Positions 3,494 through 33,586 of a DNA stretch of 64,000 bases are shown here, piece by piece. A model generated the notes under the pieces. It was not told the DNA's origin. It made no database searches and saw nothing but the letters and a program-made list of their open reading frames with translations. The position numbers and the translations under genes are program-made. Numbering within the stretch: position 1 is the first letter of the stretch; each line of letters begins with the position of its first letter. The stretch comes from Perkinsus chesapeaki ATCC PRA-425 (Eukaryota > Protista > Perkinsozoa): the NCBI GenBank assembly GCA_013115145.1, contig JAAPAO010000121.1, positions 6,392-70,391 of the forward strand, in the 5' to 3' direction.

Positions 3494-6199
3494 ATGTCCA
3501 GCAGTAGACCAGGTCAGCAGCAACAACAACACTACACCGACATTAACGTCACAATGCGAAGAGGTTCATCGAGCTATCGAGCTGCTGCCAGATCGACAAA
3601 AGCCTTACAGCCTCCCGACGACAGTCAGCAGTTGATCGACCCTATCACCGTTGAAAAACGCGGCACTGCCAGCACTATCGAGGATACGCCTAGTGCCAGG
3701 CTCGACCCTGTGCCGGGTGATACAGGAGGACCGGCCTCGACGGCAGCAGCAGCAAGCACCATCCCGCAGAAGCCTCCGGTGAAGGCCGAGAAGCTCCTGA
3801 ACGTCCTGCTGCAGCAACTGAGTTGCGCGGAGCATGTGGCCTTCAACCTGCTCGATGGTGTCCGATGTGATGCCAATCATGTATCCTTCTTCTGCCGGGA
3901 ATACTTCAACACCGCTGCGATCGACTCTGGCATGACCATGTCGAAGTACTCTACTGTGGCTGCCGTGGAGCCGAAGCTGAAAAAACAAATTAAAACAGCG
4001 ATGGTTATCGAGATGTCCGCAGTCGCCCTGTGTAGTGTCATTTGCGGTCTGTCCTCCCAGTCGTCCGAGTGGGCTCAGGTGGTGCCCTTGGTGGTGAAGG
4101 CGAGGCTCAGGGCCCTCCTCCAGCACGTCCATGAGAACGTACTGCTTCTCATCGACTATGTCTGCCAGAAGGCTGTAGAGTTCCCCGGTGACTTCGAATC
4201 CAACCCCTACAGCATCGCCAACTTCGATCTCAATATTCTCTATCTAGCCAAGCGCTACCGCGCCATGGGCAAGGTCGGCCATGTGAACGCGTTGACCCAG
4301 AACAACGAGGAGGCGGAAGGTCTCATCGGGCAACTTTGCAAGTCCCTCTCGGCTACCACTACCAGTAGGATCCGCGGGAGCACTCTCGGCGATCAGATCA
4401 GTGGCCTGGTCACTGAGGTCCTCGGCAATGCTCACAAGACGTCTCTTGGTGTCATTCGTGGGAGGTATCTGCAAGGCCTCAGATTTAGACCGGTTGAAGG
4501 GCAGGTCTACGAAAGATACGAAAAGGTTGCGAGTGACCAGAGTGCTGCCTCGCCACTACCGCCCCCGCCAATCACAGTGTGCTTCGAGCCTCTACCGCCA
4601 ATGCTGCCCCATTTGATAAGGATGAAACCGCTCCTGCCAGCTCACCACAGCGGAGCTTCGGGCTACACAGCTGTCATTGACTTGGACGAGACCTTGGTAC
4701 ACTACTCAGAGGTTGAGGGTGTCGGCGGGAGGTTCGAGATGCGCCCTGGATGCGTGGAGTTCCTGGCGAGGCTAGCTTTTATCGGATGCGAGGTTGTCAT
4801 CTTCACTGCGGCCACACAGGACTATGCCGACTGGGTGGTGGATCAACTGGAGTCCCTCAGAGGAGTCCGAATTCACCACCGACTGTATCGCCAGCACGCT
4901 CTTCCTTGGGGGCCTATCTTCGTCAAAGATCTCACCAGGCTTGGAAGGCGGCTCGACCGCACCATCATTGTTGATAATGTAAAGGAGAATTTCATGCTCC
5001 AACCAGACAACGGCATTTTCATTTTCCCGTGGTACAGCGAGCGAGATGACACAGCTTTATTTGACCTCTTGCCGGTCTTCGAGGAGCTGGTTGCCACCAG
5101 AGTGTCGGTGCCAGTAATCCTGAACAAATACAAGGATGAAATCCCCTCCTGGGCTGGCTTTGATGGCATCGATGTTGAAGAGTGCGGCGTGGCCAATCAG
5201 TTGGCCCTGGCAGCAGCGACCATTCCCGAAGACGGTGGTGTCCTGGCCGCTGGCAACAAGATCACCGGTGCGTTCCAGGCTCCCCCGCCTCCACCAGCGG
5301 CCCACCATGACCACCCTAAGGCGGCGGTGCCTGAGTCTCAGAGGTTCCCTGGTACTCCTATGCGGGTATACGAGAAGTCTGCTGCCAACAACGGTGGTAC
5401 AGGGGCTCGAGTGCAGGCGGTGGGCATGGAGAGTGCTGCCACTAGCCATCGTGTTGTCGTGATGAACATTGGTGAGCAGTCGGCAAAGTTGGATTATAAT
5501 ACAGTAGAGAGTACACCGGTGGCGAGGCCGTATAGTGGGAGGATAATATATAGTGGAGCAGGTGAGCCTGCAGACATGATGCATTGTGTGATGCTGTCTT
5601 GTTCTGACTCTCTTTCAGCTCAAATGACACCGTCAGTGATGAGCACTGGTCACGCCCCGCACAGTGCTGCAGTTTATGGTAGCACCTCGGTCCCCCAGAC
5701 ACCGATGGTTGCTCACCGTCAAGTGTTCCAAGTTGGTCTACCCCCTCTTCAACAGAGTCTATTCTCGCCCTATTACCAGCCTTATCAATACCAGCAACCG
5801 TCGCAGCTCTCCACAGCCGGCGTCACGGCGTCACAGCCCTTCACAGTGAGGGTCCAGGCTGCTACCAGAGCGATCGGGGCGATGCCGGCCAGTCCAGTGA
5901 TGGGCACTCGAATGATAATGAGCGCAACTAACAGGGCGGCGAACGCAGCAGCGCCGCCACCACCACAGCACCACTTTGCCCATTATGCTCCGAGCCCTCG
6001 CCAGGTTAGTGTGCTGCTATGCCGACTGTTTATTTATCTTTGTTGTTAGGTTGCATCGTGGCCTTCGCCATCTCAAGTTATACCTCCATCGCCTTTGGTG
6101 AGCAGTAGGATTATAACCACCCACCAGCCCAACGTGATGACCTCACCATCATTCTGGCACCAATCGGAGCAGCAAACCGCAGCGGTGATTCGTCTCTAA
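3494..6199 (+). CDS. FCP1/SCP (NIF domain) HAD-family phosphatase with long low-complexity flanks
   Basis: DLDETLVH (DxDxT motif), VIFTAATQDYADWVVD, HRLYRQH, FVKDLTRLGR and IIVDN..QPDNGI. A phase-0 intron at 6005-6049 adds a terminal exon ending TAA at 6199. Confidence 0.88.
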
Positions 6200-6663
6200 T
6201 AGATCCCTCGCTGAAGTTGTTTATTAGTATCGCAGCTGAAGTACGAACTTGCCGTCTCTGCACTCCACGTTTAATGTCCGTGTCAGGTCATCACTGTAGT
6301 CGCCGTATCGATACAAGGCCTATTAGTCTTAACAAATGGGTGACTAGCAGCAGCCCTCGATGACGCCGCTGCTACTGCCTCCTTGCCGTATTCCCCATCA
6401 CCACTGTTATGATGTGGGGTACTATCAGTACAGTATCGTCACCGTCATCCTGCATCATTATTATTAAGTGCATGTCTATCTGGTGCGTGCTGATCGTTAG
6501 ACGACGACGTCCCCTAGTAATCTCCTTCTTCTGAGGAAGGAGCGGTATGTTAATCGTACACAAGTACAGCAAAGCATGAAACATGTTTAAGCATATTCCC
6601 TCTGACTTGTGTTCGAGTCAATTCCCGTCAATCCTACCGCCCGCAGTACCTGCTTGCCTCACC

Positions 6664-8043
6664 ATGCATCGCGGAGCCTTCCACGACCGTTTCGGTGACA
6701 CCAGCTGCATCGTCCTTGTGGTCATCCACTGCAGGAGCACCGAGCAAGCTGCTGAGCAGGCAAAGATAGCCCTGGCCTCCGGTGTGCACGGTATCCTGCT
6801 CATCAACCAAATTGAAGGCCCTGAAGGGTCCGTGTCGACCCTGCCACTTGAGTCTGATTTTATCCCAATCATACTGGCCGTTCGCAAGGCCGTTGGTGAC
6901 AAGCCCTTCCTTGGTATCAACTGCCTCGCCGTTACCGCTGATAAAGCCCTTCCCATCCTGGCTGAGCTACTGCCCGACTGCAAGATCGATGCCTACTGGG
7001 CTGATGACGCCAGAATCGACGAGAGACAGCCTTCCCATGCCCAACGTGAAGCTTATAATATCTCTGAAGTCTGGTCACGGTTCCCACAGTTCGGTCTCTA
7101 CTTCGGTGGTGTTGCCTTTAAAAAGCAGCGTGAAGTGGCCGCGGATGACTGGGCTCGAGCAGCCTGGTTGGCGGCCCCCTTCATGGACGTCATCACTACC
7201 TCTGGCGTGGCTACTGGTGTTGCTGCAGAGGTGGAAAAACTTATAAGGTTTCGTCGATCGGCCGGAAACAGCGCCATTGCTGTCGGGTCCGGTGTCACTC
7301 CAGACAACGTCGACAGTTATCTGCCATTTGTGGACTGTCTCATTGTGGCTACAGGAGTGTCAAAGTCATTCCACCAGCTCGACGTGGAGAAGCTTAATAG
7401 TCTCATGGTGAAGTGCCGACGCTATCCTTGGTATGCTAGTCTAATGCAACCCCGTACGCGACGGCCACCCTCCGAGTTCGCCTGGCTGGACCCCTCGGCA
7501 ATATACGGCGACAAGCACGGTTGGTCGGCCCTGCTGGGTGATCTGCGCAGCAGGATACAAAATGAGGTCGGTGAGCACCGCGTGGCTGCCATCGCGGGAA
7601 TTGATGCAACTGGCTTCGTCACTGGCGGGGCCCTCAGTGCCCTCCTGGGCGTCCCCTTCATAATAATGCGGAAGGCGGACAAGCTTTGTGTTGAAACTGT
7701 TGGCATTGATTACACTGACTACTCCGGCAAGCAGAAGACCTTGGAAATCCGTACGCCTTTGATGGTCGCTACTGATGACGACAGGGACGGTGTCGTTGTG
7801 GTGGACCAGTGGATAGAGACAGGTCACACAATGCGCGCTGCTGTCGAACTACTCAAGACCGTCGGTCTTCGGGTTATATCTACCGTCACTGTGGCGGCCG
7901 AATCACAGGGTCGGCCGCTGGTGGAAGTAGCTCTGCTCGAGGGCAAGGTCATCACAGCGCTGAATGGTCCTGTTATCCAGAAGGAGATCGATGCTCACTT
8001 CGTGGAAAGTTTCAAAGGCCATGCCGGCTTTAAAGATCGATAA
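6664..8043 (+). CDS. Intronless fusion: BtpA/SgcQ-like TIM barrel + type I phosphoribosyltransferase (APRT-like)
   Basis: N-half VLVVIHC...GVHGILLIN, FGGVAFKKQR, DVITTSGVATG, AVGSGVTPDNV, LIVATGVS resembles the BtpA family. C-half IAGIDATGF..GGALSALLGVPFIIMRKADKL and VVVVDQWIETGHT resembles APRT. Single uninterrupted ORF; likely start MHRGAF at 6664. Confidence 0.8.
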   Translation: MHRGAFHDRFGDTSCIVLVVIHCRSTEQAAEQAKIALASGVHGILLINQIEGPEGSVSTLPLESDFIPIILAVRKAVGDKPFLGINCLAVTADKALPILAELLPDCKIDAYWADDARIDERQPSHAQREAYNISEVWSRFPQFGLYFGGVAFKKQREVAADDWARAAWLAAPFMDVITTSGVATGVAAEVEKLIRFRRSAGNSAIAVGSGVTPDNVDSYLPFVDCLIVATGVSKSFHQLDVEKLNSLMVKCRRYPWYASLMQPRTRRPPSEFAWLDPSAIYGDKHGWSALLGDLRSRIQNEVGEHRVAAIAGIDATGFVTGGALSALLGVPFIIMRKADKLCVETVGIDYTDYSGKQKTLEIRTPLMVATDDDRDGVVVVDQWIETGHTMRAAVELLKTVGLRVISTVTVAAESQGRPLVEVALLEGKVITALNGPVIQKEIDAHFVESFKGHAGFKDR

Positions 8044-8188: not shown

Positions 8189-9000
8189 ATGCCGTCAACA
8201 GCGACTGCTGCTGCGAAAGAGAAAGTTGTCGAAGGGGAACTGCCACCTTCGGGAGCTCTGTCGGCCAGGTACTGGTCAAAGTACAGGCATTCTAGAAACT
8301 CTCGGAAGCCTTGCAAGATCAACGTAATTCCGCCACTGCACAATCGGGCTCGGTTTTGGCACCTTTCGACAGATCAAGACTGACGATCCCCCGGCTGACC
8401 ATAAAGGTCTGAAGGCTTTTGCGTACCGGGAAAATGAAGCAAGGTAGCCCTTGTAGGTCGCGTGTGCCGTGAAGCTTGTTGTGACATAGGAACCTTGGCA
8501 AGCCCGAGTACACCGTAGTAGAGGGTGTTACGTCGGTACAAGTATTCTCAAAGATACCCAACTTCACGGACTTCACCGCGGAGCTGGTGCAAATCCAACC
8601 GGTGCGTCATCATTGACTGCATCAGACTCCAGGTCCTCTGCTCATTTACTCTTAGGGATTCTCGGTGCCGACAGAGCGGTACGCTTTGGGCGACATTTTC
8701 GTGATTGTCCTCGACTGTGCGGATGGAGAGCTCGAGTGTCTGATGGGGAAGGACACCAAGTCGGTGGATGGGGAGCTGGATGATGGAGCTACCGTTCTCT
8801 GGCAGAATCCCCTGCAGTCGGCATGCAATGTTGGTCATTCCGCAAGGCATCCGATATAGCTTCTATAATGGATCAAGAGAAGTAGATGCCATGCTGAAAG
8901 TGAGGCGGTATTGAGGGCGCACTAATATCGCTCTGTGCTCCTGCTGGATCGAAGTGGCCAGAATACCGACTGGGGAAGTTGCAGTCTGATAGAACTCTGA
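8189..9000 (+). CDS. Spliced cupin-fold (RmlC-like) protein; 3' end uncertain
   Basis: Phase-consistent exons give VQVFSKIPNFTDFTAELVQIQPGFSVPTERYALGDIFVIVLDCADGELECLMGKDTKIPCSRHAMLVIPQGIRYSFYNGSREVDAML. The spacing matches cupin motif 1 (PG) and motif 2 (iPxG..Y...N). Confidence 0.5.
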
Positions 9001-11695: not shown

Positions 11696-12727
11696 CTACT
11701 CGAGCACCGTAGTTCTCCTTGATAATATTTTCTTCACGGCCTCTTCAGCATTGATGCGTCCGAAAGGGAAATGTTTCTGTCCACTCTTGTCGGTAATTCC
11801 CATCGTGGCGGTTCCCTTGAGTATGTTCTTGGCATCACCAGGAGTTAGACCAGGATTAAGACTGTAGAGCATCGCAGCCACACCAGCAGTTATGGCGGCA
11901 GCTGAGGAAGTGCAGGCCACATGATCAAATTCTCCTCCATTCAACGTAGTTACAATATTCTCCCCGGATGCGGCAACGTCCACGTAGTCTGCATAGTTAG
12001 ACTCGTAATCGAGCTGCATGTTTGACGTGCCTGTCGCAGCGACGCAGAGCAGGCCGTGAATATTGTCACTGAGGGCACATGGGTAACGCTTGTCGACGCT
12101 GATGTCCTTGCCCTGATTCCCAGAGCTGGCGATAACCAGCAAACCGGCTGCGTCCGCCTCCTTGAGTCTATCAATGAGATGCACAGGACATGAGTCGGCT
12201 GAACCTGCCATCAATATGATCTTTATGTTATCCTTCTCGTGATTTTTAACAACATAGTCAACAGCATCGATCAATGCCATGAAGGTGGGCGATTTACCCC
12301 TGGAGATGGGCATGATATTGACAAGATCCATCACACCTGCTAGGCCAAATCTATTATTGATAGTAGCGCCCAAGATGCCAGCCATTTGCGTCCCGTGCCC
12401 GGTTTGGTCATGAGTGTCAGTGCTACGGTCGACTACATTATAGCCTTTCACAACATTAGAGACCAGGTCAGGGTGCTTGGAGTCGACTCCACTGTCGATG
12501 AGAGCCACAGTAACTCTTTCCCGCTTATTTTCAGTGGACCATAGAAGACTCCATGCATTTGGTACTCTGATAGCCTGTAAGTATCCTAGCTGGTACTTAT
12601 ACAGTGGGTCATTAACGATGGGGTTGCCAGCGAAGACGATGGGTTCTGATGTATTCTTGAGGCCCCCTACCAATAATAGTAAGCTGCCGAGTGAGAGGGA
12701 GTGATGTAACATGTTCCACTGAGACAT
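11696..12727 (-). CDS. S8 subtilisin, short (type A), intronless, signal peptide
   Basis: Catalytic motifs VALIDSGV (D), GHGTQMAG (H), SGNQG (oxyanion N) and ACTSSAAA (S), with a hydrophobic N-terminus. Confidence 0.9.
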   Translation of the reverse strand: MSQWNMLHHSLSLGSLLLLVGGLKNTSEPIVFAGNPIVNDPLYKYQLGYLQAIRVPNAWSLLWSTENKRERVTVALIDSGVDSKHPDLVSNVVKGYNVVDRSTDTHDQTGHGTQMAGILGATINNRFGLAGVMDLVNIMPISRGKSPTFMALIDAVDYVVKNHEKDNIKIILMAGSADSCPVHLIDRLKEADAAGLLVIASSGNQGKDISVDKRYPCALSDNIHGLLCVAATGTSNMQLDYESNYADYVDVAASGENIVTTLNGGEFDHVACTSSAAAITAGVAAMLYSLNPGLTPGDAKNILKGTATMGITDKSGQKHFPFGRINAEEAVKKILSRRTTVLE

Positions 12728-27692: not shown

Positions 27693-28391
27693 GCATTTTA
27701 AACAATATTGCTTGATTTTCTAATATCATTGATCCTCGTTTCTCGTTATTTGGTTTTTGCTTGTCAATCTTGCCGTATTGTCACTCCCCGGTGACACAGC
27801 CGCTGTACTACCGAGCCTGGGAAATGGAGACCTTACTGACCTAAGCGAAAATGATCTCGTCACTTAGGATCCCTCAAAGTATTCTCTTAGACAGTTTTAC
27901 TTAGGATTCATCGATTGGAACAAACTCGAGATTGTCATCGCCCGTTGTTCATTGCCTATTGCCTATTTCATCTCATTTACACTAATCTACTTACGACGAC
28001 TCAAGAGGGTGACGAGATATGCGCAGCGCCATATCAGCCGAGGCGCGGCCGTCTAACATAATGATCTGCCATGCCAAAGCATGCCATGCTATCGGCGGCT
28101 TCATAGAGGTTGCAGCTACTCCGTCGAAAAGTCGCTGACGAGCGGACTCTCCAGAACGTACAATCTTACAAAGAGCCCGATTATCAACTGCTAATGACAT
28201 AATAGCTCATTGCAGTAAGCGCCGCGGTCTCCTCACGGAGCATGGCGCCGCGCGACGTCACGTCCAAGCCGATGTCGCGTCTAAGTGGATGTCACCATTC
28301 GAGTCATCGCTCCGGACCCCTATGGGTGGTTGCAGTTAACGGAATTGTTATCTCTCTCAGCATTATCCTCTCATATTGCTCTCCATTTTCC

Positions 28392-29846
28392 ATGCAATCA
28401 CTTCTCCCTACCCTCCTCATCTGGTTCGCCATTGGTCAGACTACCCGTGGTCAACGGACTATCCTTTCGGTCCTTTCTAATGACTCTATGATAGATGTCC
28501 GCCATATTCCACAGCGCCTTTCTCTGGCTGGCATCCCAACATCTCCGAAGTCAGACAAGGTCGTAGCGTTTCTCTCTGCTGCCTCTATCGAGACCCTAAG
28601 GTTCGCCGGATGCCAGATTGCTCCGACGTCGGTTTCTACTGTGAGGAGTGACGAGCTTTGCGATTACCTGCATCTAGCTAGCCATCACATGCCGCATCTC
28701 TCGGTCGCTTGCGGCGAGGATGCTGAAGTAGTTGAGTTGGTGAACCGCGAGCGGCAACATTCCAACCAACCAACCACTACAAGTACCGCGCAGCCCACCA
28801 CCCCACGATCGACGACAACAACCACATCACAGCCTCCTCGGCCAGCGCTCGATGGTGAGCTGCATGTCAATGACGCACATGTACGGTTCCAGAAACACCT
28901 TGCACGCATGAAAATGGGAGATGTTTGGGATCTTGTGAAGCAGTATCCACGACGTAATGTGACCGTTGCGGTGATCGACGAAGGAGTTGACTTCACCGAC
29001 CCTGACCTGGCTCATTTGCGAAGTACCTTCACGAGGAGCGATGGCAGAGTTATCGATGGTGGTTGGAACTTCGTTGACAACAGCTCCTCTCTCGCACTTG
29101 ACGATTATCATGGTCAGTATATTAGTCGTATAATTGGGGCTCAAGCGAATAACTCATACGGAATAGTCGGAGTTGCACCCGACCATGTCCGCCTTGTATC
29201 TTTACAGGCCTCTGGCATTAATAATACCGGCACCGTAATCGATGTCATAGAAGCTCTCGACACGGCGATGGACATTGGAGTCGATGTTGTGTCACTATCT
29301 ATGGGCTTCCAATTCACGAATGACTCTGTCATCTCGACAGTATTTCTCACTTTTGCCTTGAGAAGGGCCGAGGATCGAGGAATAATTGTAGTATCTGCTG
29401 CTGGTAACGACAATACGGATGCGGAGCGGTACTATCCTTGTGCATACAGCACCCCAAGCTCCATTTGTGTAGCCTCCCTCAGTGATGAAGCAGCTTACAA
29501 TCTTTCCGATTATTCTAATTACGGTAACCGTGTCGATCTGGCTGCGTTTGGCGATAACATCTACGCTGGTCCTAATGCCGTCGGTAAACATTACTTGGTC
29601 TCTGGTACATCCTTCGCTGCTCCAATGGTAACCGGCGCAGCTGCCATCCTACTGTCTATGGGAGCTGAGCGATCCGTGGTTAAACGTTTACTACTTGAGG
29701 GAGCTGATCACTTCGATTCTCCTGGTCGACCACTAAACCAAGCTGGTGGCGCTCTCAATATTTTAGAATCGGTTAAGCGAGTGATCGGCATGTATAGTCT
29801 CCGTCCTATAAATGAGCAGGCGCTCAATCTTCGCGGCCGGGTCTAG
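28392..29846 (+). CDS. S8 subtilisin, long (type B: signal, about 100-aa pro-region, Thr-rich linker), intronless
   Basis: VAVIDEGVD, YHGQ, AAGNDN and SGTSFAAP motifs. Likely ATG (MQSLLP) is at 28392. Confidence 0.9.
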   Translation: MQSLLPTLLIWFAIGQTTRGQRTILSVLSNDSMIDVRHIPQRLSLAGIPTSPKSDKVVAFLSAASIETLRFAGCQIAPTSVSTVRSDELCDYLHLASHHMPHLSVACGEDAEVVELVNRERQHSNQPTTTSTAQPTTPRSTTTTTSQPPRPALDGELHVNDAHVRFQKHLARMKMGDVWDLVKQYPRRNVTVAVIDEGVDFTDPDLAHLRSTFTRSDGRVIDGGWNFVDNSSSLALDDYHGQYISRIIGAQANNSYGIVGVAPDHVRLVSLQASGINNTGTVIDVIEALDTAMDIGVDVVSLSMGFQFTNDSVISTVFLTFALRRAEDRGIIVVSAAGNDNTDAERYYPCAYSTPSSICVASLSDEAAYNLSDYSNYGNRVDLAAFGDNIYAGPNAVGKHYLVSGTSFAAPMVTGAAAILLSMGAERSVVKRLLLEGADHFDSPGRPLNQAGGALNILESVKRVIGMYSLRPINEQALNLRGRV

Positions 29847-32059
29847 TACTCGTATTTACTACAACATGCCATCTTAGGATGTTAAGCAGACTGGCGTTTT
29901 GGCAGGAGATGCCGCAAGGCCTCTAGATCCCGATGAAGGGTAACTTACCCTACTTATTTTTCTAGTATAGTATTTCCCGTCCATTTAGGTCGGATAGTAC
30001 GACGAATCCTCGATATTTTTTACTGCCATTCTGTCTTCATCGAATGAGCTTTTCGTGTTGTTGGTAAATACCGGCCGTGATTGATGAACAGTTCTAATCT
30101 CGAGTTGATACCCTCGTTGAGTACTTTTTTAGTATTAGTAAAGTAAAAGCACTCATACGATGTACGCCTTCACGTGGCGGCTCTTTCAAGGGTTTTTGCC
30201 ATTTCTAATCCCGATTCAAGCTTCCCAGCCCACCAAACTCGCCTCTTACGGCTCCGAGACTCTGGTATTAGAACTACTTACTGTATTTTCTGTAAAGGAT
30301 ACCATATCTTCCAGCCTTTTCCAAAGTGCGCAAGTCACATACCACCAGCTGCAAGTATCTACTTCCCAAGTTGAGAGATATGAATTCCGTATTATGAAAC
30401 AGCAGTGCCAGCATGTCCGAGCTCGTAATTTTTTCTCCACGCCGCCTCCTCGGAGATTGTACATCTCACCCGATGCCAAATGGTGGCGATCGCGGCGATC
30501 TGATCGCCCCAGCGTCGGCTATCATTTCTAACAGTGCTGTGCCTTGCGATCGCTTATTTTCTCCTTCCCATCACATACGCGCTCTCTCAGTCTCTTCAAG
30601 AGACTCTCTTGCAGTGAAGACACTGAAGTAGTTAAATGGGAAAACCGTCAATGACACTACCACCAAGCCACTTTCGACTACTACGACGGTAAGATAGCCA
30701 GAGAAGTCACGGTCGGCATCTACAAAAGCAACTACAATCCTTTACTAAGAGGAAACGCTACTACACCACCGTGCTGTCACCACGCATAACGACTACCGAT
30801 GATAAGCTGTATTTCGGTGATGCACGTGACGTGTAGCACATTCACAGCTCATCACTTACTCCATTCGACTGGCTTTGCCGATCCATGATGAATCATCCAT
30901 CCAGTCAGGCGGCCGGACTCCGGCCCTAGGAGACACATCGGGAAGGCTGCGCAGGACTGAGATAACGCTGGTGTTCGAGTCTGGAACCATTGTTATGTGG
31001 GTATCGAGGATGATAAATTCCGGAACACCCGGGAGTATTGCAGCTTCATTGTGAACTTCACAATGTGACGCCTTTCACTCACCCAGATTGGGTGCCAACT
31101 ACTAGCCATCTGCTCCGCCGCGTTAACCCGTCAGTGAGAGCCTCGGTAGACGGCTCCTCGGTCAGTAGCCAATTAGACTCTCTCTGTCTCGGACGGTCCG
31201 AGTCAGACCTCTGGTGTGTGTAGTATACGAAGGATACTGACCAGAAGTTCGAGACTTGAAACTTCGAGTTGCTGAATTACTATGGTCTGCTCCACAAAGA
31301 CCCGCGTCGCTGCTCCGGCGACTGGCGGACCGGGATGCCCGCTTGTCGCGGTATTAGTTGATGAACTCTGAAGAGTAACACAACAAAGGAGCTTGAGCCA
31401 GAATACCAATACTACGACCCTGGGACAATAGTTATAAGCGCACTGACTACACATAAGTTCTGTACCAAACAATGTGTGCGCAAACACAATTACTCCGCGC
31501 AATTAATCGATATTGGGCTCGACAGCTATAAAGGGAATGGCGAAGGTTTAATCCATCGGACAACTCTCCAGTATATAGTAATACCCTTCGGGACATAAAA
31601 AATTGTGGGAGGATCAGCACTATAGCAAGAGGGGATCAATCTGGACCCACAACACGCTCCAGCTTCAGCATAGTGGCGCGTCTCAGTGACGCCATCGGGG
31701 ATTTCGAAACGCTGCAGCGTTATTGTAGTAAGCCTGCAGTATTGCCTTGCCTTTATCATCGGTAAGGCTCTCACCGTAAGGGCATCGAAAGGGTCCATAG
31801 CTGCACATCCGGTAGCGAGTGATGGTGTGCCCAACACACTGCGCAGAACCCCCTTAGATTCCTTGCAGAGAGAAGCGGCTGTTTGTGATGCGCTGGCTCG
31901 CTCTAGAAGATGCCAGTAAGGTGCATCTTGTGCTTTTTAAATGTTCTTTTTTATTTTCCCCACATCATAAGCATGATATCTGTGTGTAAGGCTTCTCCCT
32001 TAACCTCTTCTTCTTGGCAGGGCTGTTTTATCCCCTTTTTCCCGCTCACGCGAGCCTTA

Positions 32060-33586
32060 ATGCAAGCCTTTCTCCCTATACTCCTCATCTGGTTCGCCGT
32101 TGGTCAGACTACCCGTGGTCAACGGACTATCCTTTCGGTCCTTTCTAATGACTCTATGATAGATGTCCGCCATATTCCACAGCGCCTTTCTCTGGCTGGC
32201 ATCCCAACATCTCCGAAGTCAGACAAGGTCGTAGCGTTTCTCTCTGCTGCCTCTATCGAGACCCTGAAGTTCGCTCGATGCCAGATTGTTCCGACTTCGG
32301 TTTCCACTGTTGAAAGTGACGAGCTTTGCGAATACTTGCATCTGGCTGGCCATCGCATGCCGGGTCTCTCGGTCGCTTGCGGCGAGGATGCTGAAGTTGT
32401 TAAACTAGGGAACCGTGAAAGACGTGATCCCCCTACGTCTCGATCGACCACTACGACTACACCTTGGCCAATGAAGCAGCGATCGACCACTACAACGACC
32501 CCTCAACCTACCACACTACAAGCAACCATTACAACACCAACACAATCGATCACGTCACCCGCAAGGGTTGCACCGGCAACGCAGCCTCCTCGACCACAGG
32601 GCGACGATAAGCTGGATGATCCACGTATACATTTCCAGACCCTAATGAGACGCATGAAGATGAGTGATGTCAGGCAACTCATCAAGCAGTATCCACGGCG
32701 TAATGTTACAATTGCGGTGATAGACGACGGGGTTGACTTCAGTGACCCAGGCCTGGCTCCTCTGCGGAGCTCCTTCACCATGAGCGACGGCAGAGTGATT
32801 GATGGTGGTTGGAACTACGTAAATGACAGCTCGACTCTCTCGTTCGATAGCTATCATGGGCAGTTCATTAGCCGTATAATTGCAGCAAAAATGACCAACC
32901 CATATGGAATGGCCGGAATTGCGTCAGATAATGTTCGCCTTTTATCCTTACAAATTTTCGAAGGCAAAAAAACAGGTTCCGTTGGCAACCTGCTGAAGGC
33001 TCTCGATATGGCTATAGATATCGGAGTCGATATAATCTCGCTATCAATGGGTTACCGGTTCACAGCCGATTCTTTGGGGCATTCAAGGCAGCTTATGTTT
33101 ACTATGAGGAGGGCCGAGGAGCGTGGCATTATTCTTGTTTCAGGAGCTGGTAATGATCATCAAAATGCAGGTCGGGTCTATCCTTGCTGGTTCGAAGGTT
33201 CGAACTCTATCTGTGTAGCTTCACTTAGTAACGACGAAGTTTACAATCTTTCGGATTTTTCTAACTACGGTAACCGTGTCGACCTTGCTGCCTTTGGCGA
33301 GAAGATGTACGCTGGTCCCGATGGCGATGGTAGCCTCCCACTGGTCTCTGGTACGTCGTTCGCAGCTCCAATGGTAACCGGCGCAGCTGCCATCCTACTG
33401 TCTATGGGGGCTGAACCATCCGTGGTTAAACGTTTACTACTTGAGGGAGCTGACCATTTTGATTCTCCTGGTCGACCACTAAACCCGGATGGTGGCGTTT
33501 TGAATATTTTTGAGTCAGTTAAGGATGTAATTGGCACGTATAGTCTCCGTCCTATTGATAAGCACACACGCTCTCTCCGTAGCTGA
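32060..33586 (+). CDS. S8 subtilisin type B, tandem paralog of 28392-29846
   Basis: IAVIDDGVD, YHGQ, GAGND and SGTSFAAP motifs. Near-identical N-terminus and a longer Thr/Pro linker. ATG (MQAFLP) is at 32060. Confidence 0.9.
   Translation: MQAFLPILLIWFAVGQTTRGQRTILSVLSNDSMIDVRHIPQRLSLAGIPTSPKSDKVVAFLSAASIETLKFARCQIVPTSVSTVESDELCEYLHLAGHRMPGLSVACGEDAEVVKLGNRERRDPPTSRSTTTTTPWPMKQRSTTTTTPQPTTLQATITTPTQSITSPARVAPATQPPRPQGDDKLDDPRIHFQTLMRRMKMSDVRQLIKQYPRRNVTIAVIDDGVDFSDPGLAPLRSSFTMSDGRVIDGGWNYVNDSSTLSFDSYHGQFISRIIAAKMTNPYGMAGIASDNVRLLSLQIFEGKKTGSVGNLLKALDMAIDIGVDIISLSMGYRFTADSLGHSRQLMFTMRRAEERGIILVSGAGNDHQNAGRVYPCWFEGSNSICVASLSNDEVYNLSDFSNYGNRVDLAAFGEKMYAGPDGDGSLPLVSGTSFAAPMVTGAAAILLSMGAEPSVVKRLLLEGADHFDSPGRPLNPDGGVLNIFESVKDVIGTYSLRPIDKHTRSLRS

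What the first reader, a model, noticed from the sequence alone, without database searches (positions are those of the whole stretch)
6664..8043. BtpA/SgcQ TIM barrel fused to an APRT-like phosphoribosyltransferase: Rosetta-stone clue to an uncharacterised salvage step
Seen: one intronless ORF with a BtpA-like N-half and a type I PRTase C-half, among intron-rich neighbours. Known: BtpA/SgcQ proteins are phosphate-binding barrels of unknown reaction, and UMP synthase likewise joins a barrel of this superfamily (OMP decarboxylase) to a type I PRTase. Inference: the barrel makes or consumes the base/nucleotide handled by the PRTase, giving a two-step salvage enzyme, possibly acquired horizontally.
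Basis: partly seen in the sequence, partly recalled or inferred. Interest (0 to 1): 0.72.

Follow-up and report, generated by a model that had tools for sequence, protein, structure and literature searches.

The report
Barrel-phosphoribosyltransferase fusion enzyme, function unknown
One uninterrupted gene in this Perkinsus-like genome joins a BtpA-type phosphate-binding barrel to an adenine-phosphoribosyltransferase-like domain; it belongs to an uncharacterised enzyme family of marine bacteria that sits beside a nutrient importer and cytosine/uracil-handling genes, so it probably processes a nucleobase in two steps.

Summary
Window 6664-8043 (+) is one intron-free ORF of 459 aa: a divergent BtpA/SgcQ (beta-alpha)8 barrel, a short linker, and an APRT-like type I phosphoribosyltransferase (PRT). 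AlphaFold gives pLDDT 91.

The architecture is not unique to this genome. At least 511 marine alpha- and gammaproteobacterial species carry it, as do Perkinsus marinus and Diplonema. It is fused in about two thirds of bacterial loci. In the rest it is two adjacent same-frame genes, so it is a genuine Rosetta stone.

In bacteria it lies beside a PotD-like ABC importer in 51 of 52 long loci. In 75% it lies beside cytosine deaminase, of either the yeast or the E. coli type. UPRT, URC1/URC4 uracil-catabolism genes or a PRPP synthetase paralogue are often nearby.

It is not a plain APRT. It scores far below the APRT cut-offs, residues that matter in human APRT are replaced, and host genomes keep a canonical apt.

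My best reading (about 0.5) is a PRPP-dependent two-step enzyme for a pyrimidine-type base. The substrate is unknown.

Horizontal origin is unresolved, because the eukaryotic copies cluster together. This includes PRT-only genes in fishes and amphioxus.

No RNA data covered the gene, and I found no literature on the family.

The parts
6664..8043 (+). Complete coding sequence of the two-domain protein (459 aa plus stop), without introns
   Evidence: ORF list. Identical to the called protein P0001. Colinear with bacterial homologues over residues 1-453. Single copy in the genome.
6583..6663 (+). In-frame upstream extension of 27 codons, not conserved; probably 5' untranslated leader rather than coding
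   Evidence: All homologues, including the P. marinus and Diplonema proteins, start at the position of the ATG at 6664.
6664..7428 (+). N-terminal (beta-alpha)8 phosphate-binding barrel (aa 1-255), a divergent branch of the BtpA/SgcQ family
   Evidence: PF03437 at 30.2-32.7 bits against cut-off 30, and 35 of 35 relatives hit it. hhalign to canonical BtpA gives 96.9%. AlphaFold pLDDT is mostly above 90. VIA-align Z is 15-18.7 to TrpF, KDPG aldolase, GGGPS, TrpA, RPE, ThiE, HPS and OMPDC.
6997..7023 (+). Family signature WADDARIDE (aa 112-120) after strand 4, an acidic cluster on the catalytic face of the barrel
   Evidence: Translation. W112, D114 and E120 are invariant, and D115 and D119 nearly invariant, in 69 sequences. 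This motif replaces the canonical BtpA motif F[IV]R.N.
7114..7131 (+). Family signature AFKKQR (aa 151-156) after strand 5, a basic cluster
   Evidence: Translation. A151, F152, K153, Q155 and R156 are invariant. It replaces the canonical BtpA motif DV.VKH.
7429..7473 (+). Inter-domain linker (aa 256-270), the place where bacterial split forms carry a stop codon, a ribosome-binding site and a new ATG
   Evidence: This is the lowest-confidence stretch inside the model (pLDDT 64-72). Split junctions are shown.
7474..8040 (+). C-terminal APRT-like type I phosphoribosyltransferase domain (aa 271-459), beginning with the hood motif FAWLDPS
   Evidence: PF00156 E 5e-11. phmmer to human APRT E 3e-10. 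Foldseek TM 0.79-0.85 to APRTs. Translation of the hood motif.
7792..7830 (+). PRPP/5'-phosphate-binding loop VVVVDQWIETGHT (aa 377-389); the family consensus is VDQW[IV]ETGGT
   Evidence: Translation. V377, D381, W383, E385, T386, G387 and T389 are invariant in 69 sequences. The G-to-H change at 388 is specific to Perkinsus.

Best explanation
The gene encodes a bifunctional enzyme. A BtpA-type phosphate-binding (beta-alpha)8 barrel is followed by an APRT-like type I phosphoribosyltransferase (PRT). It is the Perkinsus-type copy of a conserved family found in marine alpha- and gammaproteobacteria. There the two halves are either fused or encoded by two adjacent genes. They are nearly always next to a PotD-like ABC importer and mostly next to cytosine deaminase.

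Most likely mechanism (inferred, not shown): the PRT half couples a nucleobase of the pyrimidine/cytosine group, either imported or made by the neighbouring deaminase, to PRPP. The barrel then binds the resulting 5-phosphoribosyl compound through its standard phosphate site and converts it further. This conversion could be an isomerisation, or ring or substituent chemistry. The logic matches OPRT followed by OMP decarboxylase, or TrpD followed by TrpF. In bacteria the product would feed uracil salvage (UPRT) or nitrogen-yielding catabolism (URC1/URC4). In the protist the enzyme stands alone.

Shown here: the architecture, fold, family, conservation, split/fused states and gene context, and that it is not the housekeeping APRT.

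Inferred: that it consumes PRPP, that the substrate is a pyrimidine, and the order of the two steps.
For: Architecture and fold. pTM 0.89 for the whole chain suggests a fixed packing of the two domains.

Conservation: 55 invariant columns across 69 sequences lie in both halves. They include the base-stacking hood (W274, D276, P277), the ribose/5'-phosphate loop (D381, T386, G387, T389), and the polar residues of the barrel's catalytic face (H22, N48, N86, D114, E120, K153, R156, S180).

Functional coupling of the halves: 48 loci are fused and 26-27 are split but adjacent. 26 of 27 split pairs are in the same frame, and the tree needs at least 4 changes of state.

Context, in 52 loci of 15 kb or more:
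- solute-binding protein (SBP) 51, ABC ATPase 52
- cytosine deaminase 39: 26 of the yeast Fcy1 type (E 4e-38 to solved Fcy1) and 13 of the CodA type (NF005748, 727 bits against cut-off 438), never both
- UPRT 15, URC1 11, URC4 11
- a PRPP synthetase paralogue directly downstream in the Roseobacter group

Profile across 151 Roseobacteraceae genomes: the barrel is in 10. The SBP orthologue is in 10 of those 10 against 6 of the other 141 (Fisher p 6e-12). Fcy1-type deaminase is in 4 of 10 against 4 of 141 (p 6e-4).

Not the housekeeping APRT: a canonical apt above cut-off lies elsewhere in 4 of 5 carrier genomes.
Against: - No biochemical, genetic or expression data exist for any member in the libraries searched.
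- The base is unknown. APRT models are the best-scoring named families, so a purine cannot be excluded.
- A dedicated UPRT and cytosine deaminase already account for simple cytosine-to-UMP salvage, so the step filled by this enzyme is not obvious.
- The equivalents of human APRT R67 and E104-Y105 are replaced. This could mean altered chemistry, or binding without catalysis.
- Each half also occurs alone: the barrel in huge phages and the PRT in fishes and amphioxus. The halves therefore need not always act together.
- The barrel's structural neighbours are many unrelated enzymes with tied Z scores.
- Relatedness of genomes inflates the Fisher tests.
Confidence: 0.5

Rival explanations
1. It works inside URC-type uracil catabolism on the ring-opened intermediate. 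The PRT half would run in reverse on 5-phosphoribosyl-urea, releasing urea and regenerating PRPP. Alternatively, the TrpF-like barrel would isomerise that ribosylamine.
For: In 11 of 52 long loci the gene lies in one co-directional operon with URC1- and URC4-like genes, next to UPRT. The steps between UMP and ribosylurea are described as uncharacterised (PMC7530994). The best single structural match of the barrel is TrpF, which acts on a phosphoribosylamine (Z 18.7). Some members also reach the PRAI model.
Against: Five carrier genomes of the Roseobacter, SUP05 and Acidiferrobacter types have no URC1 or URC4. No match for either was found in the window's own genome in a six-frame search. Most loci lack both genes. 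In yeast, URC4 is already assigned to ribosylurea breakdown.
Confidence: 0.15
2. The PRT-like half no longer catalyses. It senses PRPP or a nucleotide and controls the barrel enzyme, as the PRT-like domains of PurR and PyrR control other functions.
For: Pur operon repressor chains appear among sequence and fold matches (E 0.002; Z 16.4). The equivalents of human APRT R67, E104 and Y105 and the second acidic residue of the PRPP loop are replaced in the whole family.
Against: The base hood, the ribose-binding Asp and the 5'-phosphate loop are invariant. Other active PRTs, such as UPRT, also lack the second acidic residue (own knowledge). A PRPP synthetase paralogue directly downstream in Roseobacter-group operons suggests that PRPP is consumed. 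The PRT half persists alone as a spliced gene in fishes and amphioxus.
Confidence: 0.12
3. It is simply an adenine phosphoribosyltransferase for purine salvage, with an inert or merely structural barrel, as database names suggest.
For: The best NCBIfam and PDB sequence matches are APRTs. Several homologues are auto-named 'adenine phosphoribosyltransferase'.
Against: It scores 65-67 bits against APRT cut-offs of 125-243. Carrier bacteria keep a canonical apt at 215-228 bits, while the family's own PRT scores 94-98. The window's genome has a second, spliced APRT-like locus. The barrel has about 40 invariant residues and is kept as a separate gene in split forms. The gene context is pyrimidine, not purine.
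Confidence: 0.07
4. The two halves have unrelated roles and are joined, or adjacent, by chance or for co-expression only.
For: Each half exists alone somewhere: in phages and in chordates.
Against: Adjacency or fusion was found in all 75 bacterial loci where both halves could be located. The state changed repeatedly without separating the halves. The predicted interface is confident (pTM 0.89).
Confidence: 0.05
5. The ORF is bacterial contamination of the assembly, or a decaying pseudogene.
For: It is intron-free and its closest full-length relatives outside protists are bacterial.
Against: It lies on a contig of about 70 kb with eukaryotic genes (NIF phosphatase and subtilases). GC and codon usage match the neighbours (cosine 0.92 against 0.85-0.94). 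P. marinus has orthologues at 61-65% identity. All family-invariant residues are kept.
Confidence: 0.02

Closest known systems
UMP synthase of kinetoplastids (OMP decarboxylase barrel + orotate PRT, PDB 3qw4)
   Same: The domain order is the same: a phosphate-binding (beta-alpha)8 barrel, then a type I PRT. Foldseek aligns 479 columns over both halves and VIA-align 367 residues. In that enzyme the PRT makes a ribotide that the barrel converts.
   Different: Neither half belongs to the OMPDC or OPRT families. There is no Pfam hit to them. The barrel match is no better than to a dozen other barrels, and the overall rmsd of 13-15 A shows a different domain arrangement. Here the substrate is unknown.
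Adenine phosphoribosyltransferase (EC 2.4.2.7; TIGR01090, human APRT 1ore/6fch)
   Same: It has the same fold (TM 0.79-0.85, 22-28% identity), hood motif, RK pair and 5'-phosphate loop.
   Different: It scores far below the family cut-offs. By the alignment, R67 becomes T/M/A, E104-Y105 becomes Y-S, D127-D128 becomes D-Q, and A131 becomes E. It carries an N-terminal WYL..MAPN.KG extension and coexists with a canonical apt.
BtpA/SgcQ family (PF03437, TIGR00259), phosphate-binding barrels without a known reaction
   Same: It matches at profile level (96.9%). It shares the strand 6-8 region with the TSG..TG and SGV phosphate-binding motifs.
   Different: It is only marginal against the Pfam model (30-33 bits). 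A six-frame family search misses it in a carrier genome (G004). The canonical motifs after strands 4 and 5 are replaced by YWADDA..DE and AFKKQR. It is linked to a PRT, which canonical members are not.
TrpD/TrpF and HisG/HisA logic (a PRT followed by Amadori isomerase on a phosphate-binding barrel)
   Same: TrpF is the top single structural match of the barrel (Z 18.7, rmsd 2.7 A, 194 of 200 residues). A few members reach the PRAI Pfam model. A PRT stands next to the barrel.
   Different: There is no sequence-level membership in PRAI for the window's protein. The PRT is type I APRT-like, not TrpD or HisG. The resemblance is a lead only.
URC pathway of uracil catabolism (URC6 = UPRT, URC1, URC4; Lachancea kluyveri, PMC7530994)
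   Same: Bacterial homologues of URC1 and URC4, together with UPRT, share an operon with the family in Arenicellales and relatives. Both use PRPP-dependent activation of a base.
   Different: The family also occurs without URC1/URC4. No match for either was found in the window's genome. It has no counterpart in the described fungal pathway.

Membership tests
BtpA/SgcQ family (PF03437) | Score at or above the Pfam gathering cut-off (30 bits) | tested here: met
   It scores 30.2 bits as the whole ORF and 32.7 bits as the N-half alone, covering only profile positions 173-249. All 35 relatives' N-halves hit, best E 6e-12. The match is marginal but consistent.
BtpA/SgcQ family (PF03437) | Profile-level homology to canonical members over most of the barrel | tested here: met
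   hhalign of 35 N-halves against two canonical BtpA (266 and 253 bits to PF03437) gives probability 96.9%, E 1.6e-10, over 195 columns.
BtpA/SgcQ family (PF03437) | Conserved motifs of canonical members after strands 4 and 5 (F[IV]R.N; DV.VKH), as read from two canonical sequences | tested here: inconclusive
   They are replaced by YWADDA..DE and AFKKQR. Only two canonical sequences were compared and the family's reaction is unknown. I therefore file the protein as a divergent sister branch, not a typical member.
Type I phosphoribosyltransferase (PF00156) | Gathering cut-off, PRT fold, and a PRPP loop (hydrophobic strand, acidic residue, then T-G-x-T) | tested here: met
   It scores 42.6 bits against 26.3. 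Fold TM is 0.79-0.85. The loop is VVVVDQWIETGHT, with D381, T386, G387 and T389 invariant. The second acidic residue is Q.
Adenine phosphoribosyltransferase (TIGR01090 / NF002636 equivalogs) | Score above the curated equivalog cut-off | tested here: not met
   It scores 65.5 against 185.85 and 67.1 against 125. The bacterial family PRTs score 94-98 bits, while true apt genes in the same genomes score 215-228.
Adenine phosphoribosyltransferase (TIGR01090 / NF002636 equivalogs) | Residues important in human APRT (R67, E104-Y105 loop, D127-D128). Their roles come from my own knowledge of the APRT literature. | tested here: not met
   The alignment to human APRT places T, Y-S and D-Q at these positions. 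The replacements are family-wide.
UMP synthase (OMPDC + OPRT) | Barrel belongs to the OMP decarboxylase family and PRT to the orotate PRT family | tested here: not met
   No Pfam or NCBIfam hit reaches OMPDC. pyrE scores only E 0.028. OMPDC barrels reach Z 15.4-15.6, below TrpF, aldolases and GGGPS. Only the architecture is analogous.
URC uracil-catabolism gene set | Obligate co-occurrence with URC1 (GTP_CH_N + GTP cyclohydrolase II) and URC4 (DUF1688) | tested here: not met
   They are together in 11 of 52 long loci. Both are absent from 5 carrier genomes and were not found in the window's genome (the DUF1688 search had no positive control).

The most novel reading that the evidence does not exclude
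The barrel and PRT pair catalyses a reaction sequence not yet described. One example would be the first phosphoribosyltransferase for a cytosine-type base, followed by a TrpF-like or OMPDC-like conversion of the ribotide. This would define a new PRPP-dependent branch of pyrimidine use in abundant marine bacteria (Roseobacter group, SUP05, Arenicellales, sponge symbionts). The branch would be retained in perkinsids and diplonemids and, as the PRT half alone, in fishes and amphioxus. It would also give the first reaction for any BtpA-type barrel.
Probability: 0.3. Interest if true: 0.8.

Novelty: new variant of a known kind. Interest (0 to 1): 0.6.

Why it matters
The BtpA/SgcQ barrels are an old family that has sequences and a structure-genomics entry but no known reaction. 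Here one branch is tied, by fusion, by repeated fission without separation, and by operon context, to a PRT, a specific ABC importer and cytosine/uracil enzymes. That turns 'unknown barrel' into a short, testable list of substrates.

The carriers include ecologically dominant marine bacteria, so the pathway could matter for the turnover of dissolved nucleobase nitrogen.

For the parasite Perkinsus, and for Diplonema, a bacterial-type nucleobase enzyme would be a distinctive piece of nucleotide metabolism. No full two-domain homologue appeared in any animal among the proteins listed; only the PRT half did.

The PRT-only relatives in fishes and amphioxus are an unexplained second APRT-like gene in vertebrates.

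Tried and rejected
- Folding the N-half alone without an alignment gave an unusable model (pLDDT 43). I used the full-length model for the fold searches instead.
- RNA evidence: no listed run holds the stretch. The two tiny runs of the same species label put contigs only at 8501-8586 and 8693-8759, downstream of the gene. Transcription and unit length remain untested.
- Literature: searches for BtpA with phosphoribosyltransferase, SgcQ/PF03437, URC terms, cytosine transporters and zgc 174895 found nothing on this family. 'BtpA' hits were the unrelated Brucella TIR protein.
- Sequence search of solved structures with the N-half profile found no relative.
- The ORFs next to the phage barrels are not diverged PRTs.
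- I rejected the idea that the family is an obligate URC component.
- I rejected recent contamination or recent transfer.
- I did not run the big representative search, because the word searches and family scans did not leave the family open.
- Ccm cytochrome-biogenesis genes and an ArgD-type transaminase next to some loci were judged bystanders. They are lineage-specific and on the opposite strand.
Full report
**Observation.** The + strand carries one ORF from 6583 to 8043. The gene as called in public data (P0001, 459 aa) starts at the ATG at 6664. Every homologue begins there too, including Perkinsus marinus and Diplonema. The 27 codons upstream are not conserved.
- Pfam finds a type I phosphoribosyltransferase (PRT) domain in the C-half (PF00156, E 5e-11). 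It finds BtpA in the N-half at the edge of significance (30.2 bits, cut-off 30).
- NCBIfam ranks adenine PRT models first, but far below their cut-offs (65-67 bits against 125-243).
- An AlphaFold model built on 69 relatives is confident (pLDDT 91, pTM 0.89). It shows a (beta-alpha)8 barrel at aa 1-255, a linker at 256-270, and a PRT fold at 271-455.
- Foldseek matches the C-half to solved APRTs (TM 0.79-0.85, 22-28% identity). It lays Leishmania UMP synthase over both halves.
- VIA-align gives the barrel Z 15-18.7 to TrpF, KDPG aldolases, GGGPS, TrpA, RPE, ThiE/TenI, an uncharacterised phosphate-binding barrel (4ml9), HPS and OMPDC, with no clear winner.
- The BtpA assignment is firm at profile level. 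All 35 N-halves of relatives hit PF03437. hhalign against two canonical BtpA proteins gives 96.9%, E 1.6e-10, over 195 columns. The canonical motifs after strands 4 and 5 are replaced by YWADDA..DE and AFKKQR, so this is a divergent sister branch.

**The host genome.** The nearest proteins are from Perkinsus marinus (61-65% identity).
- The assembly has 41.7 Mb in 3544 contigs, and the gene is single-copy.
- The window also holds a NIF-type phosphatase, an alpha/beta hydrolase and three subtilases.
- GC (0.558), GC3 (0.60) and codon usage (cosine 0.92 to pooled neighbours, which themselves score 0.85-0.94) are indistinguishable from the surrounding genes. The gene is therefore resident and compositionally settled.
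- It is intron-free, because it is colinear with bacterial proteins. The adjacent NIF gene is also one long ORF, whereas UPRT and a second APRT-like locus in this genome match exon by exon. First-stage notes on spliced neighbours were not rechecked.

**The family.** A word search found 294 relatives, almost all about 453 aa with both domains, on contigs up to 8 Mb.
- A scan of one genome per species found it in 511 bacterial species. The best 80 are marine Alphaproteobacteria (Phaeobacter, Sulfitobacter, Shimia, Leisingera, Roseovarius and others) and Gammaproteobacteria (Granulosicoccaceae, Arenicellales, Acidiferrobacteraceae, SUP05 Thioglobus and sponge symbionts).
- In a sample of 151 Roseobacteraceae genomes, 10 carry it, so it is an accessory gene.
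- Both halves are strongly conserved, with 55 invariant columns in 69 sequences.
- In 48 of 75 bacterial loci the halves are fused. In 26-27 the barrel ends with a stop codon (TAA, TGA or TAG) in the linker and the PRT restarts a few codons later. In Phaeobacter italicus the 12-base spacer is a textbook ribosome-binding site before the ATG.
- 26 of 27 split pairs are in the same frame. On the tree the state changes at least four times.

**Gene context.** I clustered neighbours, named them by family scans and recounted by tblastn. In 52 loci of 15 kb or more:
- A PotD-like binding protein occurs in 51 and its ABC ATPase in 52.
- Cytosine deaminase occurs in 39. It is either the yeast Fcy1 type (26 loci; E 4e-38 to solved Fcy1) or the CodA type (13 loci; NF005748 at 727 bits, cut-off 438), never both.
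- A PuuE-like deacetylase-family hydrolase occurs in 22, UPRT in 15, URC1-like and URC4-like genes in 11 each, DUF1989 in 10 and a creatinase-like M24 hydrolase in 8.
- Arenicellales and relatives have one operon: two Fcy1-like genes, this gene, the importer, URC1 and URC4, with UPRT divergent.
- The Roseobacter-group order is barrel, PRT, a PRPP synthetase paralogue, LysR, importer, deacetylase-family hydrolase, Fcy1-like deaminase.

Across the 151 Roseobacteraceae genomes:
- The binding-protein orthologue is present in all 10 carriers and in 6 of the other 141 (Fisher p 6e-12).
- The Fcy1-type deaminase is in 4 of 10 carriers against 4 of 141 (p 6e-4). Shared ancestry inflates these values.

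Two unrelated deaminase folds at the same place argue that deamination of cytosine, or a close analogue, belongs to the pathway. The PRPP synthetase argues that PRPP is consumed.

**What it is not.**
- It is not the housekeeping APRT. Four of five carrier genomes have a canonical apt at 215-228 bits, while the family's PRT scores 94-98.
- By the alignment to human APRT, R67, E104-Y105, D128 and A131 are replaced by T (M/A in bacteria), Y-S, Q and E. The roles of those human residues are from my own knowledge.
- It is not an obligate URC component. Five carriers lack URC1 and URC4, and no match was found in the window's genome. The URC pathway description is from PMC7530994.

**Mechanism.** The PRT half keeps an aromatic hood (W274), the ribose-binding Asp (D381), the 5'-phosphate loop and the RK pair. 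A planar base plus PRPP is therefore the simplest substrate pair. The barrel keeps the standard phosphate site on strands 7 and 8 and has an acidic cluster and a basic cluster on its catalytic face.
- I take the pair to act in sequence on one phosphoribosyl compound, by analogy with OPRT/OMPDC or TrpD/TrpF (confidence about 0.5).
- The base is most likely of the cytosine/uracil group because of the context. No data fix the base or the order of steps.
- Rivals are a role on phosphoribosyl-urea within URC (0.15), a sensing rather than catalytic PRT (0.12), a plain APRT (0.07), unrelated halves (0.05) and an artefact (0.02).

**Evolution.**
- In full-length trees, Perkinsus (two species) and Diplonema form a clade (SH-aLRT 99-100) on a long branch opposite all bacteria. 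They share indels.
- A fused copy on a gene-sparse 1.4-Mb metagenomic contig (L002, possibly eukaryotic) sits next to them.
- Searching the PRT half alone found split bacterial PRTs. Unexpectedly, it also found stand-alone homologues with the full family signature in teleost fishes, amphioxus and one bird.
- The fish gene has five exons on a 36-Mb chromosome. No barrel lies within 10 kb.
- In a PRT-half tree rooted on canonical APRTs, all eukaryotic rows group together (SH-aLRT 81) and bacterial monophyly is unresolved. The root branch is very long.
- Transfer between domains is therefore likely at some point, but its direction and number are open. 'Acquired horizontally by Perkinsus' is not shown.
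- Stand-alone barrels also occur in two huge uncultured phages (42% identity, E 3e-40), one near a nucleoside deoxyribosyltransferase-like gene.

**Limits.** No RNA run covers the gene. The single-sequence fold of the N-half failed. No paper on the family was found.

Noticed in passing
P0124, P0136, P0148, P0161, P0166, P0167 (fishes), P0172 (amphioxus), P0168 (bird, partial); loci L089 10001-16105, L090 10001-12171: These are stand-alone homologues of the PRT half carrying the full family signature (WYL.LMAPN.KG..FAWLDP ... VDQWIETGGTM). They exist as spliced chordate genes, named 'adenine phosphoribosyltransferase(-like)' or zgc:174895. The fish gene has 5 exons over 6.1 kb, and no barrel lies within 10 kb. 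It looks like a second, unexplained APRT-like gene in vertebrates.
   Followed up: partly
L087 6824-7693 (LR745208.1, 485 kb) and L088 6989-7894 (LR756502.1, 642 kb): Two huge uncultured phages encode a stand-alone barrel of this branch (42% and 32% identity to a bacterial member) with no PRT beside it. In LR756502 a nucleoside 2-deoxyribosyltransferase-like gene lies two genes downstream. The ESM Atlas also lists a 224-aa barrel cluster that is 56% viral.
   Followed up: partly
L002 7869-9323 (protein P0015): A fused copy lies on a gene-sparse 1.4-Mb metagenomic contig (GC 0.46; neighbours have no Pfam hits). Its PRT half is the closest relative of the chordate genes (50-55% identity). In trees it sits between the protist clade and the bacteria. 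The organism is unidentified and may be a eukaryote.
   Followed up: partly
L057, L075, L078, L079, L065, L047, L013 (for example L075 16843-18069 for URC4; L057 7751-9016 for URC1): Marine gammaproteobacteria have compact operons. They combine two yeast-type (Fcy1-like) cytosine deaminases, an ABC importer and URC1- and URC4-like genes, with UPRT divergent. This looks like a bacterial counterpart of the fungal URC uracil-catabolism gene set.
   Followed up: partly
Split loci, for example L038 7500-7580; 26 of 27 split loci: Where barrel and PRT are separate genes, the two ORFs are almost always in the same reading frame. They are a few codons apart and use all three stop codons. This suggests fission of a fused ancestor by nonsense mutation, rather than independent adjacent genes.
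   Followed up: yes
window 11696-12727 (-), 28242-29846 (+), 31910-33586 (+): Three subtilase (Peptidase_S8) ORFs lie in one 64-kb window. A NIF/CTD-like phosphatase (3494-6049, single 851-aa ORF) and an alpha/beta hydrolase (1124-2530) are also present.
   Followed up: no
P0002 (379 aa) and P0004 (280 aa), Perkinsus marinus ATCC 50983: The two public P. marinus models are incomplete. P0002 stops inside the PRPP loop. P0004 has an unrelated N-terminus joined to the end of the barrel and lacks part of the linker. P. marinus probably has one or two full-length fused genes that are mis-modelled.
   Followed up: no
G000:C1175:10437-10803 (L097, L098): The window's genome has a second APRT-like locus that matches the apt model in two exon-sized pieces (44 and 42 bits). 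It is probably the ordinary spliced APRT.
   Followed up: no
P0181, P0184, P0214, P0243, P0287 and others: Stand-alone barrel proteins of 243-255 aa that contain no PRT domain are named 'adenine phosphoribosyltransferase' in public records. The name was evidently copied from the fused forms.
   Followed up: no
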